From the NCBI RefSeq assembly GCF_035594765.1, contig NW_026943827.1, positions 1,550,001-1,614,000 on the forward strand: a stretch of DNA of 64,000 nucleotides. The letters run 5' to 3'. The position numbers and the translations under genes are program-made. The DNA comes from Anolis carolinensis (Eukaryota). Positions 6,960 through 54,600 of this stretch are shown in pieces (positions within the stretch are counted from its first letter, which is position 1; each line of letters begins with the position of its first letter). The notes below the pieces were generated by a model, which had not been told where the DNA came from, searched no databases, and was given only the letters and a program-made list of their open reading frames with translations.

Positions 6960-7567
6960 ACCCTTGATGTTATTTTTGTTATTATTACTGACCTTGAGGC
7001 CGGGTGGCCATCTGCCAGGGGTGCTTTTCTTGTGGTGCTCAGAGGCAGAAGAGGGCTGGACTACATGGCCGAAAGGGTCTTTTCCAACCCTTGATATTAT
7101 TTTTATTGTTATTATTACTGACCTTGAGGCTGGGTGGCCATCTGCCAGGGGTGCTTTGCTTGTGGTGCTCAGAGGCAGAAGAGGGCTGGACTAAATGGCC
7201 GAAAGGGTCTTTTCCAACCCTTGATATTATTTTTATTGTTATTATTACTGACCTTGAGGCCAGGTGGCCATCTGCCAGGGGTGCTTTGCTTGTGGTGCTC
7301 AGAGGCAGAAGAGGGCTGGACTACATGGCCGAAAGGGTCTTTTCCAACCCTTGATATTATTTTTATTGTTATTATTAGTAACATTGAGGCCGGGTGGCCA
7401 TCTGCCAGGGGTGCTTTGCTTGTGGTGCTCAAAGGCAGAAGAGGGCTGGACTACATGGCCGAAAGGGTCTTTTCCAACCCTTCATATTATTTTTATTGTT
7501 ATTATTACTGACCTTGAGGCCGGGTGGCCATCTGCCAGGGGTGCTTTGCTTGTGGTGCTCAAAGGCA
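6960..7567 (+). repeat. Tandem array of a 130-bp unit (about 4.6 copies) derived from a CR1 3' end
   Basis: GTGGCCATCTGCCAGGGG recurs at 7004, 7134, 7264, 7394, 7524; resembles the CR1 tail at 61540-61640 (reverse). Confidence 0.9.
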
Positions 7568-26950: not shown

Positions 26951-27249
26951 TGTTAGAACAGAACCGAGGGTACAAGTTGTAATAGATTTGCAAACATAGA
27001 GGATTTTTTTAAAGAAAAAAAACTTGGCATTAATACTAAATGTATTTTGCCCAGTAGCTGGCCACCCAGCAGTTTCATGTAGATGTTAAAAAGCATGGGG
27101 GAAAGAATGGAACCTTGTGGGACCCCACAGGTCAATGGCCAGCTTTCATTAATTTTCCATATAAATTGTTTTCTTGGGAGACGGAGAACAAGAAAAAGGA
27201 AGAGGAGAATGAGAAATAAGGGAGGAGGAGAAGGGGATGAAGAAAAAGG

Positions 27250-28927
<1,678 letters not shown>

Positions 28928-36097: not shown

Positions 36098-36217
36098 CCC
36101 CCCCACCTATGAAGTTTGATTGAATTGTATTGGTGGTTTTTTGATATTATTACTGTTGTATTAATTTTGTTTTGTTTTATTACCTTATTGTGTTTTAACC
36201 TGTGTATATTGTGCTAA

Positions 36218-36544
36218 GGAGCCCTGGTGGCAAAGTGTGTTAAAGCGCTGAGCTGCTGAACTTGCCGACTGAAAGGTCCCAGGTTCAAACCCTGGGAGCG
36301 GCGGGAGCGGCCGCTGTTAGCTCCAGCTTCTGCCAACCTAGCAGTTTGAAAACATGCCAATGTGAGTAGATCAATAGGTACCGCTCCGGCAGGAAGGTAA
36401 CGGCGCTCCATGCAGTCATGGCCACATGACCTTGGAGGTGTCTACGGACAATGCCAGCTCTTTCGCTTAGAAATGGAGATGAGCACCAACCCCCAGAGTC
36501 AGACACGACTGGACTTAACGTCAGGGGAAACCTTTACCTTTTTA
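36218..36544 (+). mobile_element. Sauria SINE, full length
   Basis: tRNA-like head with A/B boxes, core GTGAGTAGATCAATAGGTACCG, tail (ACCTTT)n. Confidence 0.92.
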
Positions 36545-36635
36545 TGTTGTGCTAATGTATTTGTGTTGTTACTTTTGTAACAATGTGAGCCGCTCCGAGT
36601 CCCCGCGGGGAGATAGTGGCGGGGTATAAATAAAG

Positions 36636-36901: not shown

Positions 36902-37170
36902 ATCTATACATATAAAAGGGTAAAGTTGTTTGTTCTGCGACTATAACAACACAACTAAACACCCCAGAAATACGAAACTTGGCAACACAACGCAAAAGCC
37001 TTGCCTCACGGTTCTTACAACACAACCACACCACAAAAACACAATCCGGAGCCACAAAACCGAAAAAACCAGCAAACATGCACAACAACGCAACTACATG
37101 ACCCAAACACACAAAACTTGGCAACACAACCCAAAATCCTTGCCCCTAGGTGCCAACAACAAAAATAAAA
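36902..37170 (+). mobile_element. Helitron-like 5' terminus, G-depleted
   Basis: A|TCTATACATATAAAAG start; AAACTTGGCAACACAAC subunits. Confidence 0.55.
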
Positions 37171-38064
37171 GAAAAATAAAGTCCTAATTAGAAGAAAATG
37201 AATAATTGTTTTTATCCAATTGCTGACAGTTTTAGAAGCCTAAGCTCCGCCCACTTGGTCTCCTAGCAACCCACTCAGCCCAGGGGACAGGCACAGTTAA
37301 GCCTCACTTAGGCCTCTTCCACAGTATGCCGTCACACCCAGGCACCTTTTTAAGCTTTAGGATGTGCTTCTTCCTTTGCCCAGGTGAACTGCGGGGGCCT
37401 TACTTAGAAGCTCTGGAAATCCCAGTAACCAAAGGCACTTCAAGTAGAACAATCAAACAAAATTTTATTTTCACAAAGTCCTTGGCAGACTTGGCACATG
37501 TAATTAAGGTTGCAAATAAAAACAGTCAACTTATAAAACCTTGCAGATGTTCCTTTCGTGGCTTTTCCCCTTTAGTTGCTGGGTTAACTTCCACCAAAGG
37601 CAAAGAGGTCCAGAGATCCTCTTCACCCTAACTCTGAGCTGCTATTAAAAAGGTCTATAACTATCTAAGCTCAAAGCTAGTTTTTGAGGCAAAGTTGGTA
37701 GGGCTTCTCCAGTGGCAAAGAAATCCAGAGATGTTCTCTGCCCCAGTGCCAAAGCTATTGGAAAGAACAGGTCTTTCCCCTATCTATACTCAGCACTGGT
37801 TTTAAAGGCAGGTCAGTACTTACGATGGCCTTTTCAGAGTTGGCCTGGCTCGGCCACACAAGCACATCTACGTTGTTTCTCCTTCAGTCTAGAAGGCAGA
37901 AAAGGCTTCTCAACATGGAGCCTTCTATCTACAAAATGACACATTTGCAGGCTGCAAGCAACAAAGACTTGCAAACAGGCTAAACCATCAGACTGCTGCA
38001 GAATCTGCAGCAACCCTGGAGCAAATGCAAACAGATGCTATTCCTACAACTATAAAAAAATGCA

Positions 38065-38799: not shown

Positions 38800-39815
38800 T
38801 AATATATTGCATTATTTTATCACATATTATTATATTATATATTATGCCATTATAATATATTACACTTATTATATTATTGTATGATTATTGCTATATTATA
38901 ATATTACTGACATCAAATTGGATAGGATAAAATAATTATAATAATATAATATAATTATTCTATCCGATTTGTTGTCAATCCATTCCTTTGGACTTCATGC
39001 AAATCTCCCCTTTGCCAAAATATATGGTCCTGTGCTTTGAGCAAAGTCAAATTAGACTTATGATATAATAATTATTATAAAATATAATTCCAATGGCTTT
39101 CCTGTCTTGCTCCTCCTCTGGTCCTGGTCCATCAAGGGAGCTCCTCCCTCCCCCCTCCCTCCCTGGATGGCTGTTCTGTGCCTGCAGGGGGCGGCATGGA
39201 GACCCTTGTGATGCGCTGCAGCATCTCCCTCTGAAGGCCTTTCCCTTGGGAAGCTCACTTTCCCCGTTCACAGCAGGAAGGAAGGCAGGTAGTCGCTCGC
39301 TCTCTCTCGGTTCTTGTTCCTTGTCCGTTGCCTGTACCTGTGTCGCCTGGTTTGGTCCACATTCCAGTGAGTCTTCTTTGCTCCTCGTGTGGGGACCTAG
39401 ACCGTGGGAGGGTGTCCCTCTTGGTTCTCTTGGACCTCTCAGGGGCCTACGATACCATAGACCACGGTCTCCTTCTGGGATGCCTCGTGGGAATGGGACT
39501 TGGGGGCACCGTTTAGCAGTGGCTCCGGCCCTTCCTGGGGGTGTTGTTGGGGGACACCTTCTCGGCCCCGCAACCATTGTGTCGTGGAGTCCTGAGGATT
39601 CAGTCTCGATGACATGGCTTTTTTCCGGCCTGATGACCCCTTTGGCTTTGCTTTGTAGAGACAAAGGGGACTCTGTGTGGTGGTGGTTAAGGCCTCCTTA
39701 CAACTCGTTGCAACCGCCTTACAACTCCAGGTGTTCTTGGAAGACACTGAGTGTCTAGATCGGGCGCAGTCTGGCTTCAGGCCTGGTCATGGAACTGAAT
39801 CAGTCTTGGTCTCCT
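38800..39815 (+). repeat. Composite repeat copy 2 (CTCF motif and L2 fragments)
   Basis: Homology to the other three copies. Confidence 0.8.
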
Positions 39816-40965: not shown

Positions 40966-41231
40966 AATGACCAAAGGAAAATACTGGACAGGTTTGTGGG
41001 GGAATTCACCTTGACGTACTGGGATGTATAGTTCACCCACAATCAAAAAGCACTCTGGGCCCCACCAAGGATGGCCCTGAGCCTAACTTAGCACACAGAA
41101 CCCCCATGACCAACACAAATGCAGGAGGGCTTTGGGGGAAAGTCACCTTGATTTATAGGAATTATAGTTCACCTACATACAGAGAGCACCGTCAATGCGA
41201 ACAACAATTGATCTGGATCAAATTTCAAAAC

Positions 41232-41615
41232 TCATCATTTATTTCGGTCGTAGACCAGCACAGGAAATAAAGGTCACAGTTACATACAAACTTGGTAAGT
41301 TTAGTACATTTAAAATATAAAGATACTAAAGCACAATAACCGGGGGGGGGGGGGGAAGCGGAAGGGGAAACAGGGCAAAACATACAATGCAGAGGTCCAT
41401 CAGCCAGTTATAGAACCAAGAGAGACGATTACTGGAGACATAGGTAACTTTTGGGACCCATCATCCCCTGGCGCATTTTGTACGCACAAAACTTTGCAAC
41501 ATTGTCATTTGTAGCTGAATGAGTATCTACAAGTAGCAGGGAGGTACAAAAGTCTCCTGAACGGCCTGGGTGCTTGTGTATCAAAGGTAAGATAAGCCTG
41601 GTGCGGATATCCCTG
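41232..41615 (-). mobile_element. LINE 3' end (clade uncertain) inserted in Helitron-like DNA (40965-41835)
   Basis: RDIRTRLILPLIHKHPGRS...LLLVD...VAKFC then a 3' UTR ending GACCGAAATAAATGATG. Confidence 0.5.
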
Positions 41616-42886
41616 GCAAGCGTACCCGATATGGCCAATTTGGAAGACTGGTAGGCTTTGGGCGGGCCTTTGGGAGTTGTAGATACTGGGATTTATAGTT
41701 CACCTGCATCCAGAGACACTGGGACCACCACCGACAATAGACCAAACGTGGCACACCGGACCACCAAGACTAACTTAATATACTGGAGGGGTTTGGGGGG
41801 AACTGACCCACCATGGTGGGAGCTGTAGTTCACTAGAAGTGTTGTTGTTGTGTCACAAACCACTGTCTGAATTGTGTCATGTTTTCAACTCCAGACTTAA
41901 TAATTCAAGATTCCAAATTTTATCTTCTATTTTTTAAAAGTTATTAACTTAAAATCTGTATGAACCAAATCTTCCAACCTTCCCGTTTGTGTGAACGTGT
42001 TTGCATGACTTCTCAGCAAAGCAACCAGACGTGGTCTCTGAAGGGCCTCCTGGATCTCACGGACCTCACTCTTCCCTGAACACTCGGCATCCAAAGAACA
42101 GGAACCTTTTGGGCTCAGAACAAAACAAGCGAATGACCAAACTTGGCACAAAGACCCAGCATGGCCCACTGTGCATACAGGTGAGGTTTGGGGGTGGTTG
42201 ACCTTGGCATGTGGGAGTCGTAGTTCACCCTTATCCAGAGAGCACTGAATCCAGCCAACGTTGGATCTGCAACCCCCACCAATGATGGATCAGGACCAAA
42301 CCTGGCACACAGGACCAACAGAACATACTGGAGGGTTTTGGGGACCGACCCACCCGTGTAGGAGTTGTCGTTCACCCTGCATCCAGAGAGCATTCGGAAG
42401 CCCACCAATGACGGATGGGGACCAAACTTAGCACACAGAACCCTGATGACCAAAAGAACACACTGGAAGGGTTTGGGGGATAGACAAGACAGTGAAAAAG
42501 AATAGATGGTGATCAAAGCCATGAATAGATGTTGTATAAAGCATAATAGGAATAATAACGTCTGAAGGAAGACAATTGAATCCAAACCCATGCCACCAAC
42601 ACCGAAGAAGGAAATGATGTTCAAAGGCGCTCTAGATTAAACATTAAACCCCATTTTGGGCCAAAAACAGGTCTACCCACCCCTCCAGTTTCAGCCGTTC
42701 TGACCCTTATAAATCCCCCTTTTTTTGCAAAAAATAAAAAAATAAAATGAGATATTAAAAGCAACAATGCCAAAAAGGCAGAAATTATATATAATGCTTC
42801 AACTACACATTAAAGTAAACAGACTAACGAGTTACCTACATAGACACACAACTGAACAAACAGACATGGATACATGACTAAAAGCC

Positions 42887-47814: not shown

Positions 47815-47955
47815 CAGGCGCCGCCATCTTCCCCCTCGTCTTCCTCCTTCCCCATTGCCCGCCCCCGCCCCTCCCATTGGCTGAGCCCGGGACGCCCCGC
47901 CCACCGGAGGCCCCCCATTGGCCGCCTGCCGCTCCCCCGCCTTTGATTGACTCCT
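47815..47955 (-). promoter_or_regulatory. CpG-rich promoter module, probable promoter of ZNF D, with non-coding exon 1 ending at a donor AAG|GTGAG near 47773
   Basis: Same TCF / CCAAT / GC box / CCAAT / YY1 order as the other two copies. Confidence 0.75.
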
Positions 47956-48109
47956 GAGCAGAGTTGCCCAACGTCACACCCTTGAAGTCCTGACGGAGTT
48001 TCGGGGGAGAACCGGGCATGATGGGAGTTGTAGTTCATCCCATTCCTTATGTGTTTTGGACATTTTTTTTTTAAATAACTTGGTCAAATAACCTGGGCAA
48101 CGCCGAGTT

Positions 48110-48172
<63 letters not shown>

Positions 48173-50258: not shown

Positions 50259-50329
50259 TTCCACAGATTTACCTCATTTCACAATATAATATATTTCAAT
50301 TTTATAACAGGACTATTATGTCTGATTCT

Positions 50330-50604
50330 GGGGGTTGGGGCTCATCTCCATTTCTAAGCCAAAGAGCCGGCGTTGTCCGTAGACACCTCCCAGGTCATGT
50401 GGCCACTGGCATGACTGCATGGAGGGCCGTTACCTGAAGTGGTACCTATTGATCTACTCACATTGGCATGTTTTCGAACTGCTAGATTGGCAGAAGCTGG
50501 AGCTGACAGTGGGTGCTCACTCCACTCCCCGGATTTGAACCTGCGACCTTTCGGTCTGCAAGTTCAGCAGCTCAGCGCTTTAACACACTTCACCACCGGG
50601 GCTC
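50330..50604 (-). mobile_element. Sauria SINE, 3'-truncated
   Basis: Reverse complement of 36218-36495. Confidence 0.9.
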
Positions 50605-50609
50605 TTAGG

Positions 50610-51910
50610 GCATTATAATATATTACTATTATTATACTATTGCATGATTATTGCTATATTATGATAATATTGATGTCAGATCGGATAGGATAAGATCATT
50701 ATAATATTACAATATAATACAATATCATAATTATCCTATCCGATTTGTCGTCGGTCCACTCCTTTGGGCTTCAAGCAAATCTACCCTTTTCCAAAATATA
50801 CGGTCCTGTGTTTTGACCAAATTCCAGTTATAATTATGATATAATAATAATTATAATAAGTTTATTATATATGATTGTATTCTTTTAAAGATATGTTATT
50901 ATTATCATTACATTGTTCTGACGATGGCTTTCCCGTCCTGCCCCTCCTCTGGTCCTGCCCATCAACGGAACCCTCCCCCCTCCCTCCCTCCCTGGATGGC
51001 TGTTCCGTGCCTGCAGGGGGCGCCATGGAGACCCTTGTGATGTGCTGCAGCATCTCCCTCTGAAGGCCGTTCCCTTGGGAAGCTCACTTTCCCGTTCACA
51101 GCAGGAAGGAAGGAAGGCAGTCGCTCTCTCTCTCTCTTTCTCTCTCTCGTGGTTCTTGCTCCTTGTCCGTTGCCTTTTCAGCCTGTACCTGTGTCACCTG
51201 GTTTGGTCCACATCCCGGTGAGTCTTCTTCGCTCCTCGTGTGGGGAGGAGGGGAGGAGCAGAGGGACCTAGACCGGGGGAGGGTGTCCCTCTTGGCTCTC
51301 TTGGACCTCTCAGGGGCCTTCCATACCTTAGACCACGGTCTCCTTCTGGGATGCCTCGTGGGAATGGGACTTGGGGGCACCGTTTAGCAGTGGCTCCGGC
51401 CCTTCCTGGGGGTGTTGTTGGGGGACACCTTCTCGGCCCCGCAACCATGGCGTCGTGGAGTCCTGAGGATTCAGTCTCGATGACATGGCTTTTTTCCGGC
51501 CTGATGACCCCTTTGGCTTTGCTTTGTGGAGACAAAGGGGACTCTGTGTGGTGGTGGTTAAGGCCTCCTTACAAGAAGGCAAGAGTCCAGCCGGATTAAA
51601 CAAAGCTGTAATGAAACCACTGTTGACAAACCCTCCCTGGACCCCACTCAATGGGTCAACTTCCGGCCAGTTTCCAATCTCCCCTTTTTGGGCAAAGTCA
51701 TGGAACGTGTGGTGGCCTCACAACTCCCATTGTTCTTGGAAGACATTGAGTGTCTAGACCGGTTTAAGTCTGGCTTTAGGACGGGACATGGAACTGAATC
51801 AGTCTTTGTCTCCTCAGCAGACGATCTAAGCAGGGAACTGGACGGGGGGAGGGTGTCCCCGGTGGTTCTCCTGGGCCTCTTGTCGGCCTTCCATACCATA
51901 GACCACGGTT
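50610..51910 (+). repeat. Composite repeat copy 3 (CTCF motif and L2 fragments)
   Basis: Homology to the other copies. Confidence 0.8.
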
Positions 51911-52265
51911 TGATTGACGGGCGGCAAGGAGGGGCTTGTGTGGGCCGAGATAGCGCCGTGAAGCCAAAGAGGGAGGGAAGTGGCCCCGCTTGGCAGGCCG
52001 GAGAGGCCGAGGGGGCGGGGTCCAGGAGGGGAGAGGGCGGGGGTCAGGAAACTGGCCTGCTTGCCTGCCTTCCTTCCTGGGAGTTGTAGTTCACCCTCCA
52101 ACCAGAGAGCGCGCCCAGCCCCACCCGTGACGCCTCCTGAGCACGCTTGCCCAACATCACACTCTTCCACCACTGATGGAGATTCTGGGGGTGAACCTGG
52201 CAGGATGGGAGTTGTAGTTCACCCACAATCTTATGCATTTTGGACCATTGAAACACTGACTTTGT

Positions 52266-53716
52266 AAGTCGAAGAGGTGGCATTGCTTGTATGAGTGTAT
52301 GGAGCGCCATTAGTTTTGCGTCGGAGGAATAGGTATTGATGTAGTGATATCTGGATGTTTTGGAACTGTTGGGTTGGGAGAAGGTGGGGTAATAGTGGGG
52401 GTTGACTCTGTTTTCCGAATTCGAACCTGCGACGTTTCGTTGGAGAAGTTGAGTAGGTTAGCGGTTGAAGACGCTGCGTTATTAGGGGATATTATGTCCT
52501 AAAGGTGGTGAATATACAATATTTGTGATTATTGGGGTTTTTTGTCTGTTGGAGGTAAGTATGAATGGTGTATAAGAGATGTTGTAGGTGTTGTGAATGG
52601 GTAGAGATGACGTTATTATTGGTATATTAGAGTTGTATAAGAGATGCTGTAGGTGTGTTTTTGAATGTGGTGTGTTGTTAGAGTTAGTTTGCCTGGCCCA
52701 TGGCTTTGAAACGGGATATGGTTTTGTTTGGGTTGGTGTGTCAGTGTAGATGGAGGGTAGAAGTTGATTCTAAATGAAGATAATCCAGGTGAAATGTGAC
52801 ATTGTGGATATGGGTGGTTGTGGGTTGGAGTGGGTGGGTGTTGTTTGTATGAATGGAGGAGGAAGGAGAGGGTGGGAGGGAGGAAGTGGATGGTGGTGGT
52901 CTTGCTTTGAAAGGGTAGAGATGGGGGTCTGGGTTGTAGTGGGTGGAGCTTGTGTGTAGGAATGGAGGAGGAAGGGGAGGGGTGGGTGGGAGGAAATGGG
53001 TGGTCGTGGGTTGTCTTGGGTGGGTTTTGTTTAGAGAAATAGAGGAAGAAGAGTGGGAGGAGTTGGGTGGTGGAGCGTGTAGGATGGGCCTTGATTTGAT
53101 GAGCGGAGGAGGAGGAGGAAGAGGAGTGGGAAGGAAGAAATTGAGAGTTGTGGTCTTGTTTCGAAAGAGAAGGGGGGTTACGGAGTTTGGAGTCGAGGTG
53201 CAGGCTGTGAGGTGGGGTGCGGCTTGCCCTTCCTTATTTCTCGGTGGAGGCCTTCCGGAGGCCTAAGGAGGCCTGGTGGTGCCTCAGAGAGGAGGAGGAG
53301 GAAGAGGAGGGGGGTGGCGGGTAGGAAGAAGACCAGGTTTCCCTGCAGTGGAAGCGGCGGCGCTCTTTCCTCCTCCTGAGGGGAAGGTGAGGTCTTGGAG
53401 GAGTCGGCCGCGGTGGGGAAGAGGTGGGGCAGCCAGGCGGCTTGGGGAGGGTCGGCCTCTCTCCCCCTCCTTGTTTTTTCTGGGGTTGCCTTTGCCTTCC
53501 GGGTAAGGGGACTGGCGGCGGGTTCTGTGTTGGCGCAGGCGCAGTTTGCCTGTTGCGGTTTGTCGGCCGTGTGATTGTGTTTGTAATATAATGGTGTGGT
53601 ATCATACTGGAGGCGGGGATGATGGTTTGTGCGGTGAATTTTCAAGTTTGGGGGTTTTGGGGTTTTGTTGCTTTGTGCGTCGCCATGACGCCAAAAGCCT
53701 TTTATATATAGAAGAT
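52266..53716 (-). mobile_element. Helitron-like element with captured, hypermutated cargo including a Sauria SINE at about 52285-52488
   Basis: Right end CTTTTATATATAGAAGAT reads A|TC on minus strand; extreme C depletion on plus strand; SINE still alignable. Confidence 0.6.
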
Positions 53717-53719
53717 TTT

Positions 53720-54600
53720 ATAATATATTATTACATTATATCATAATAAATTACAATTACTATACTATTGTATGATTATTACTATGTTGTGATATTTTCA
53801 ATGTCAAATCGGATAAGATAATTATAATATTATAATATAATACAATATTATAATTATCTTATCCGATTTGTTGTTAATCCACTCCTTTGGGCTTCACACA
53901 AAAGTCAAATTACAATTATGATATATTTATTATAATATTTTATTATATATAATTGTATTCTTTTTATGATATTATATTATTATGATTATTATATATTATG
54001 AAGATGGCTTTCCCATCCTGCTCCTCCTATGGTCCTGCCCATCAAAGGAGCTCTCCCTCCCTCCCTCCCTCCCTTCCTGTTCCGTGCCTGCAGGGGGCAC
54101 CATGGAGACCTTTGTGATGCGCTGCAGCATCTCCCACTGAAGGCCGTTCCCTTTGGAAGCTCACTTTGCTGTTCACAGCAGGAAAGAAGGCAGTCACTGT
54201 CTCTCTCTCGTGGTTCTTGCTCCTTGCCCGTTGCTTTGGCTGCCTGTCGCTGTGTCACCCGGTTTGGTCCACATCCCGGTGAGTCTTCTTTGCTCCTCGT
54301 GCGGGGAGGAGGGGAGGAGCAGAGGGACCTAGACGGGGGGAGGGTGTCCCTCTTGGTTCTCTTGGACCTCTCAGGGGCCTTCAATATTGTAGACCACGGT
54401 CTCCTTCTGGGATGCCTCGTGGGAATGGGGCTTGGGGGCACCGCTTAGCAGTCCTTCCTGGAGGTGTTGTTGGGGGACACCTTCTCGGCCCCGCAGCCAT
54501 TGCTTTGTGGGGTCCTGCAGGGTTCAGTCTCAATGACATGGCATTTGGGGGCCTGCTGACCCCTTTGGCTTTGCTCTGTAGGGACAAAGGGGACTCTGTC
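53720..54600 (+). repeat. Composite repeat copy 4 (CTCF motif and L2 fragments)
   Basis: Homology to the other copies. Confidence 0.8.

What the first reader, a model, noticed from the sequence alone, without database searches (positions are those of the whole stretch)
52266..53270. Strand-specific C-to-G / C-to-T hypermutation sparing CpG inside a Helitron-like element
Seen: the plus strand is almost free of C (4 C in 52501-52680, 2 in 52801-52920). An embedded Sauria SINE can be aligned to ordinary copies in this window (50400-50604 and the reverse of 36218-36425). By eye, over 52291-52398 about 21 of 28 reference C are replaced (about 13 by G, 8 by T) against roughly 6 changes at other bases. 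For example ACCTATTGATCTACTCACAT becomes AGGTATTGATGTAGTGATAT. Most surviving C are in or next to CpG, the opposite of normal vertebrate decay. Known: AID/APOBEC enzymes deaminate ssDNA and most disfavour 5mC; UNG plus REV1 turns the uracils into C-to-G; Helitrons move through ssDNA intermediates. Inference: a germline deaminase-based mutagenesis or defence acting on one strand of a rolling-circle transposon, erasing its cargo (kataegis- or RIP-like). I do not know of this being described for lizard Helitrons.
Basis: partly seen in the sequence, partly recalled or inferred. Interest (0 to 1): 0.9.

Follow-up and report, generated by a model that had tools for sequence, protein, structure and literature searches.

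The report
One-strand cytosine loss in lizard Helitron
A 1.45-kb rolling-circle transposon (Helitron) in an anole lizard has lost about 70% of the cytosines on one strand of its alignable cargo, half to G and half to T, while the DNA on either side is untouched; this probably records damage to the template strand as the element copies itself, and I found no paper describing it.

Summary
Window 52262-53715 is a Helitron-type insertion on the minus strand in an Anolis zinc-finger cluster; a paralog shows the empty site. Its Sauria SINE cargo, against a consensus of nine free copies, has 45 of 64 plus-strand C replaced (24 G, 21 T, 0 A) versus 7 of 57 G (P 5e-11), about 17 times background. CpG cytosines are partly spared (7/11 vs 12/53 kept, P 0.012); no WRC, TC or CC motif. 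Both flanks are symmetric. Contigs from four studies hold many C-poor copies, so it is not an artefact. The spectrum fits uracil/abasic sites bypassed by REV1. The damaged C lie on the template (bottom) strand, not on the displaced strand that transposes. It is not universal: a complete sister Helitron carries an unmutated SINE. A deaminase and a defence role are unproven. Best reading (about 0.5): template-strand cytosine lesions fixed during repeated donor resynthesis. Rivals: R-loops, top-strand guanine lesions, a cDNA route. This scan noted the same footprint earlier in other Helitrons of this genome; no paper found in a library lacking most subscription journals.

The parts
52262..53715 (-). 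Composite non-autonomous Helitron-type insertion ('B'); top strand is the window minus strand, G/(G+C) 0.21; its 3' end is missing at this locus
53566..53715 (-). Helitron 5' terminal segment, starting TC after an A; 67-75% identical to the 5' ends of complete Helitrons in L004 and L005
53271..53565 (-). CpG-rich cargo that looks like a promoter or first exon (donor-like site on + near 53387, by eye); milder skew (C64/G128 on +); source not found
52708..53270 (-). Most C-poor part (C15/G186 on + over 52708-53103), with degenerate internal duplications of about 200 nt; no unmutated source found, so it cannot be polarised
52496..52707 (-). Internal segment shared with very many other repeat copies, with a repeat of about 65 nt (C12/G67 on +)
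52262..52495 (-). Hypermutated Sauria SINE cargo, sense to the Helitron top strand, with an internal deletion of about 27-30 nt near 52286-52291; the only part that can be polarised
52078..52266 (+). Left flank: subterminal piece of another Helitron-type family ('A'), cut at a 5-nt microhomology; not mutated (27/27 C kept)
53716..54599 (+). Right flank: AT-rich stretch plus a repeat unit found four times in the window; symmetric (146/156 C and 137/146 G kept)
22881..23565 (-). Paralogous empty site: matches both flanks without the insertion
36903..37325 (+). Sister Helitron 5' portion in the opposite orientation, G-poor on its own top strand (C120/G59)
50319..50617 (-). Ordinary Sauria SINE used as a reference
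36205..36545 (+). Ordinary Sauria SINE used as a reference

Best explanation
The tract is a non-autonomous Helitron whose lineage lost cytosines on its bottom strand through its own replication cycle. Step 1 (shown): the 1.45 kb is an insertion, and the bias stops at its edges. Step 2 (shown): the C-poor state is shared by many copies, so most changes arose before or between amplification steps. Step 3 (from PMC5876387): the transposase nicks and peels off the top strand; the bottom strand stays as template, and donors are resynthesised and reused. Step 4 (inferred): the unpaired bottom strand collects cytosine lesions, most simply uracil, which UNG turns into abasic sites; when the new top strand is made, REV1 inserts C (G>C on top) or another polymerase inserts A (G>A). 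Step 5 (inferred): reused donors pass the changes on, so long-carried cargo erodes and recent cargo is still clean. Step 6 (weakly inferred): an enzyme that disfavours methyl-C (AID/APOBEC type) makes the uracils, which would explain CpG sparing. This is a mutational by-product, not a shown defence.
For: Spectrum C>G 24, C>T 21, C>A 0, other bases at background, about 17-fold excess. Skew starts at 52262 and ends at 53715. Flanks symmetric and empty site in a paralog. 5' end related to complete TC...hairpin-CTAG elements. Seven related elements or fragments have C>G content on the top strand, G/(G+C) 0.33-0.40, six at P<0.05 but not independent. Other copies differ in both directions at ancestral C sites: 52409 and 52480 keep C, 52415 and 52427 have lost it, which points to stepwise accumulation. 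Precedent: cytosine lesions in the leading-strand template of a migrating bubble give equal G>A and G>C on the new strand in yeast (PMC9262586); UNG/REV1 gives mainly C:G>G:C in avian DT40 cells (PMC6316486); anole APOBEC1 is a DNA mutator (PMC3880073).
Against: A complete sister Helitron (L004:17338-18068) carries a SINE with 0 G>C of 91; explaining this needs recent capture, which I could not date. Family A Helitron-type repeats are unskewed (0.50-0.53), and an A. sagrei element has a G-rich repeat on its top strand. The displaced top strand, the obvious single-stranded target, shows no C loss. No deaminase motif. Only one 230-nt cargo could be polarised. The polarised excess in the sister at 36903 is small and no larger than in ordinary copies. 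Anole APOBEC1 is reported from the gut, not the gonad (PMC3880073).
Confidence: 0.5

Rival explanations
1. R-loop or transcription-associated mutagenesis: the element is transcribed antisense to its top strand, the G-rich RNA displaces the bottom strand, and its cytosines are deaminated in the chromosome with positive feedback; transposition only spreads the result.
For: Six runs guessed to be RNA, from four studies, hold 0.31-0.41 of the words. In X11, contigs lie across the whole element and hardly on the L2 flank at 51850-52047. The element carries promoter-like cargo. Polarity fits a plus-strand transcript, and CpG sparing fits methylated chromosomal DNA.
Against: Both flanks are untouched up to the element's edges. 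The derived state is shared among many copies. RNA status and strand are unknown, and the tool warns that contig depth does not measure expression.
Confidence: 0.17
2. The lesion is on guanine of the displaced single-stranded top strand (an oxidised or adducted G), copied as G>C and G>A.
For: The top strand is the one known to be displaced and transposed (PMC5876387), so no exposed template has to be assumed.
Against: From general knowledge, oxidised guanine gives G>T, alone or with G>C; here top-strand G>T is 0 (4 in the rougher alignment). An exposed top strand should also lose C, and it does not.
Confidence: 0.13
3. The lineage passed through RNA: transcripts ending in the Sauria SINE tail were reverse-transcribed by a LINE and the cDNA (bottom strand) was deaminated, as in APOBEC editing of retroelements.
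For: Polarity matches exactly: the SINE is sense to the G-depleted strand. G-to-A editing of anole L1 is published (PMC3880073).
Against: The 5' end is the exact Helitron TC terminus after an A. Published retroelement editing is G>A, not half G>C. None of 31 free SINEs shows it. The 3' end is deleted here, so target-site duplication could not be tested.
Confidence: 0.1
4. Selection for a G-poor top strand (less folding, fewer false terminators) or for a G-rich RNA.
For: Related elements are G-poor on the top strand.
Against: G>T removes G equally well but is absent; 1.5 hits per site against 0.09 background is too much for selection on a non-coding repeat.
Confidence: 0.03
5. Sequencing or assembly artefact (base-calling, bisulfite-like conversion).
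For: CpG-sparing, one-strand C>T resembles bisulfite conversion.
Against: Half the changes are C>G. Contigs from four studies match, some with no differences.
Confidence: 0.01

Closest known systems
Anolis non-autonomous Helitrons, e.g. Helitron-2N3_AC (Novick et al., PMC3014272)
   Same: Non-autonomous, 0.5-2 kb, can carry SINE fragments, TC 5' end
   Different: The passages read mention no strand-specific substitution; this copy lacks its 3' end; I could not compare with the named consensus sequences, so the subfamily is not assigned
APOBEC3A damage to the D-loop bottom template strand in yeast break-induced replication (PMC9262586)
   Same: Lesions on the leading-strand template; equal G>A and G>C on the new strand; microhomology deletions
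   Different: Experimental, TCW-specific, low density, not a transposon; here about 77% of non-CpG C are lost with no motif
AID-UNG-REV1 hypermutation in avian DT40 cells (PMC6316486)
   Same: C:G>G:C transversions through abasic sites in a sauropsid
   Different: Somatic, both strands, Ig loci, WRC hotspots (general knowledge); here inherited, one strand, no clear WRC preference
APOBEC G-to-A editing of retroelements, including anole L1 (PMC3880073)
   Same: G loss on the element's plus strand from C lesions on the minus strand; germline-fixed
   Different: There G>A only, about 0.26% of L1 copies, single events on cDNA; here half G>C, apparently stepwise, in a DNA transposon
Kataegis (SBS2/13) and fungal RIP (general knowledge)
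   Same: Dense, cytosine-directed changes in a bounded tract
   Different: Kataegis is TC-specific, somatic and local; RIP is C>T on both strands and inactivates repeats. Neither fits a motif-free, one-strand, amplified lineage

Membership tests
Helitron (canonical) | 5' TC terminus inserted after an A | tested here: met
   A then TC at 53715 on the minus strand, followed by a TATA-rich start
Helitron (canonical) | 5' segment homologous to complete Helitrons | tested here: met
   67-75% identity over 116-138 nt to L004:17338 and L005:18533, which end in hairpin-CTAG
Helitron (canonical) | 3' hairpin and CTRR terminus | tested here: inconclusive
   Absent at this locus; the SINE is joined to family A and about 147 nt of the ancestral site are also lost, which points to a later deletion. 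No full-length hypermutated copy was obtained
Helitron (canonical) | Insertion relative to an empty site; multiple copies | tested here: met
   Paralog 23565-22881 lacks it; 1143-2086 contigs laid per run
Helitron (canonical) | No target-site duplication | not testable with these tools
   The 3' junction is deleted in this copy
Helitron (autonomous) | RepHel open reading frame | tested here: not met
   Only two short ORFs, with no Pfam hit and no relatives: non-autonomous
AID/APOBEC-UNG-REV1 footprint | Strand-coordinated C>T plus C>G with little C>A | tested here: met
   24 C>G, 21 C>T, 0 C>A; 0 G>C
AID/APOBEC-UNG-REV1 footprint | Sequence motif (WRC, TC or CC) | tested here: inconclusive
   WRC 15/19 lost vs 30/45 others; TC 10/12; CC 9/15; GC 18/22; AC 8/14. 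No preference, but near saturation and few sites
AID/APOBEC-UNG-REV1 footprint | Methyl-CpG disfavoured | tested here: inconclusive
   CpG C kept 7/11 vs 12/53, P 0.012; methylation itself not measured
AID/APOBEC-UNG-REV1 footprint | Dependence on a deaminase expressed in the germline | not testable with these tools
   Needs expression data and an assay
RIP-like defence | C>T on both strands of repeats, inactivating them | tested here: not met
   One strand, half transversions, many derived copies
APOBEC retroelement editing | G>A only on the plus strand of a retro-copy | tested here: not met
   G>C is as common as G>A; Helitron-type 5' end; 31 free SINEs unaffected

The most novel reading that the evidence does not exclude
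Rolling-circle transposition in the anole germline exposes the template strand to a cytosine deaminase plus UNG/REV1. Certain Helitron lineages therefore act as heritable one-strand hypermutators of whatever they carry, and G loss works as a counter of transposition rounds and a direct in vivo record of which strand is unpaired.
Probability: 0.3. Interest if true: 0.88.

Novelty: new variant of a known kind. Interest (0 to 1): 0.68.

Why it matters
If the footprint is tied to transposition, it is a natural record of how Helitrons replicate in a vertebrate germline: it points to the template strand as the exposed one, a detail left open by the Helraiser model. It would give an internal clock for the order of cargo capture and for donor reuse. 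It would also mean that divergence-based ages of these elements are inflated and that old cargo is missed by ordinary alignment. Finally it would extend germline cytosine hypermutation from retroelements to a DNA transposon and point to an unrecognised germline activity of a squamate deaminase or of REV1.

Tried and rejected
(1) Resident CpG-island promoter with ordinary GC skew, my first reading: rejected as the main account, because the tract is an insertion against an empty site and the flanks are symmetric. (2) Excess of G<->T differences among copies as a sign of independent C loss: not significant after correcting for composition (P 0.10-0.23); the internal duplications are too diverged to polarise. 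(3) Search for an unmutated source of 52500-53560 with C-tolerant scoring over the window and six loci: nothing clearly above shuffles except the 5' terminus. (4) A 20-nt pattern search in metagenomes: five hits with no further homology, treated as chance. (5) The 155-aa ORF as a route to sister copies: no relatives, no Pfam hit. (6) ZNF and L2 protein searches gave nine Anolis loci (five A. carolinensis, four A. sagrei), none with a second hypermutated copy; P0121 was not on record. (8) Three Pfam calls failed on stop codons; the SCAN-like piece was then left out. (9) Five literature searches on Helitron hypermutation, skew or APOBEC found no description; most subscription journals are not in that library. 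(10) (bacterial promoter scan) was uninformative. Contig depths were used only as hints.

Full report
Setting. The window is a C2H2 zinc-finger gene cluster (84-nt arrays) from an anole: its L2 reverse transcriptase is 84-87% identical to the best hits, all Anolis carolinensis proteins. It has no N.

The observation. Apart from one CT-microsatellite, it is the most skewed 600-nt window in 311 kb of anole DNA that I collected. An embedded Sauria SINE allows polarisation. Against a consensus of nine free A. carolinensis copies, 45 of 64 plus-strand C are replaced, 24 by G, 21 by T and none by A. Only 7 of 57 G, 4 of 44 A and 4 of 53 T changed (Fisher P 4.5e-11; C>G against G>C 24:0). Non-CpG C took about 1.5 hits per site against 0.09 for other bases, a 17-fold excess. 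Among 31 other SINE copies from two Anolis species the sense-strand G>C count is 0-3, against 22 here. CpG cytosines are partly spared (7/11 kept against 12/53, P 0.012), and CpG decay is about symmetric (4 C and 3 G lost). No 5' motif stands out: WRC 15/19 lost against 30/45, TC 10/12, CC 9/15, GC 18/22, AC 8/14. Saturation limits the power of that test.

Not an artefact. Twenty public runs from nine studies hold part of the stretch. In four runs from four studies, 1143-2086 contigs were laid at 85% identity or better, including pieces with no difference over 115 and 165 nt. The C-poor state is therefore shared by many genomic copies. Copies differ at ancestral C sites in both directions: others keep C at 52409 and 52480 and have lost it at 52415 and 52427. 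Window C positions vary among copies about twice as often as other bases. This suggests stepwise accumulation rather than one event.

What the element is. On the minus strand the unit starts at 53715 with TC after an A and a TATA-rich run. The first 150 nt are 67-75% identical to the 5' ends of complete anole Helitrons that end in a hairpin and CTAG (L004:17338-18068, L005:18533-18059). Inward follow a CpG-rich promoter-like piece (53565-53271), a very G-poor segment with degenerate duplications (53270-52708), a widely shared internal piece (52707-52496) and the SINE (52495-52262), sense to the top strand. A paralog at 23565-22881 matches 52074-52267 and 53718-54052 without the element, and has about 147 nt that this locus lacks, including the 3' end of another Helitron-type family. 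So the element inserted here and a later deletion removed its own 3' end. The join uses a 5-nt microhomology that exists only after one of the C>G changes, which suggests the hypermutation came first (inference). The skew begins at 52262 and ends at 53715. The left flank keeps 27 of 27 C and the right flank 146 of 156 C and 137 of 146 G. There is no RepHel frame. Novick et al. (PMC3014272) describe such non-autonomous anole Helitrons, one with SINE fragments; the passages I read say nothing on base composition.

How general. Seven related elements or fragments from both species are G-poor on the top strand (G/(G+C) 0.33-0.40), but they share ancestry and cannot be polarised. There are real negative controls. 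The complete element in L004 carries a SINE with no G>C in 91 G. Family A repeats are unskewed, and an A. sagrei element has a G-rich repeat on its top strand. The sister 5' end at 36903 is G-poor but shows only 5 changes in 17 conserved G, like ordinary copies. The effect is thus strong in some lineages or in long-carried cargo, not in all Helitron DNA. Earlier notes of this scan report the same top-strand G loss in several other Helitrons of this genome. These are unchecked AI notes; I took from them the top-strand framing and the hint of generality, and tested neither on their loci.

Mechanism. Equal C>G and C>T without C>A is what uracil, UNG and translesion synthesis give: REV1 inserts C opposite the abasic site (PMC6316486). 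The polarity matters. Helraiser nicks and transposes the top strand, while the bottom strand templates resynthesis of donors that are reused (PMC5876387). The lost C are on the bottom strand, so simple deamination of the displaced strand predicts the wrong polarity. A precedent exists for the observed one: in yeast break-induced replication, lesions in the leading-strand template give equal G>A and G>C on the new strand, with microhomology deletions (PMC9262586). I therefore favour lesions on the exposed template during donor or circle resynthesis, accumulating over rounds (0.5). That a deaminase makes them is a further, weaker inference from CpG sparing; anole APOBEC1 is a DNA mutator but is reported from the gut (PMC3880073). 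Rivals are antisense R-loops (0.17; runs guessed to be RNA cover the element, strand unknown), a guanine lesion on the displaced strand (0.13; missing G>T argues against), a cDNA route through the SINE tail (0.1; right polarity, wrong 5' end and spectrum), selection (0.03) and artefact (0.01). The remainder is for mechanisms not listed. A defence role is not supported, because the mutated lineage kept amplifying.

Novelty and verdict. Five literature searches found no report of this footprint in Helitrons, within a library that lacks most subscription journals. The chemistry resembles known single-strand cytosine hypermutation; the substrate, polarity, density and inheritance through a transposon lineage are new to me. 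I class it as a new variant of a known kind, interest 0.68. The main limits are one polarisable cargo of 230 nt, no full-length hypermutated sister copy, and no enzyme motif. One listing of cluster members could not be made.

Noticed in passing
window:54598-54720 (+): Isolated exon-sized fragment of a CLC voltage-gated chloride channel (Pfam PF00654, E 1e-5) in the ZNF cluster, next to the right flank; probably captured or duplicated.
   Followed up: partly
window:55230-55750 (+): Looks by eye like a decayed SCAN-domain exon with stops; the Pfam test failed on stop codons and was dropped.
   Followed up: partly
window:11610-13131 and 27243-28764: 1522-nt duplicate at 99.9% identity, including part of a zinc-finger array: a very recent duplication or an assembly duplication.
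   Followed up: no
window:50605-51574, 53740-54599, 38842-39703, 23252-22305: A repeat unit of about 0.9 kb in four copies (AT-rich stretch, CTCF-like motif, donor-like site, L2 fragments), 77-90% identical; family not identified.
   Followed up: partly
window:52078-52265, 20735-21520, 23345-24000, 40968-41833, 47935-48110: Helitron-type family A is built from repeats with a ZNF143-like motif (by recall) and lies near CpG islands; it shows no G/C skew.
   Followed up: partly
window:37325-38750: What looks by eye like an LTR-retrotransposon remnant interrupts the sister Helitron at 36903.
   Followed up: no
L005:18533-17680, L004:17338-18660, L001:20321-21050: Head-to-tail Helitron pairs with one element's CTAG next to the TC of the next, in both Anolis species; may reflect rolling-circle concatemers or insertion next to existing ends.
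   Followed up: no
L014:11515-12176, L001:1634-2215: A. sagrei Helitrons carry a GA-rich microsatellite on the top strand just before the 3' hairpin, untouched by G loss.
   Followed up: partly
window:52246-53763: In run X11 (RNA is only a guess) contigs lie across the whole element and hardly on the L2 flank at 51850-52047; the family may be transcribed, strand unknown.
   Followed up: partly
window:7570-8533 and 6960-7567: A 51-nt tandem array (19 copies, 97% matches, C-rich on +) with open frames on both strands, next to a 130-nt array.
   Followed up: no
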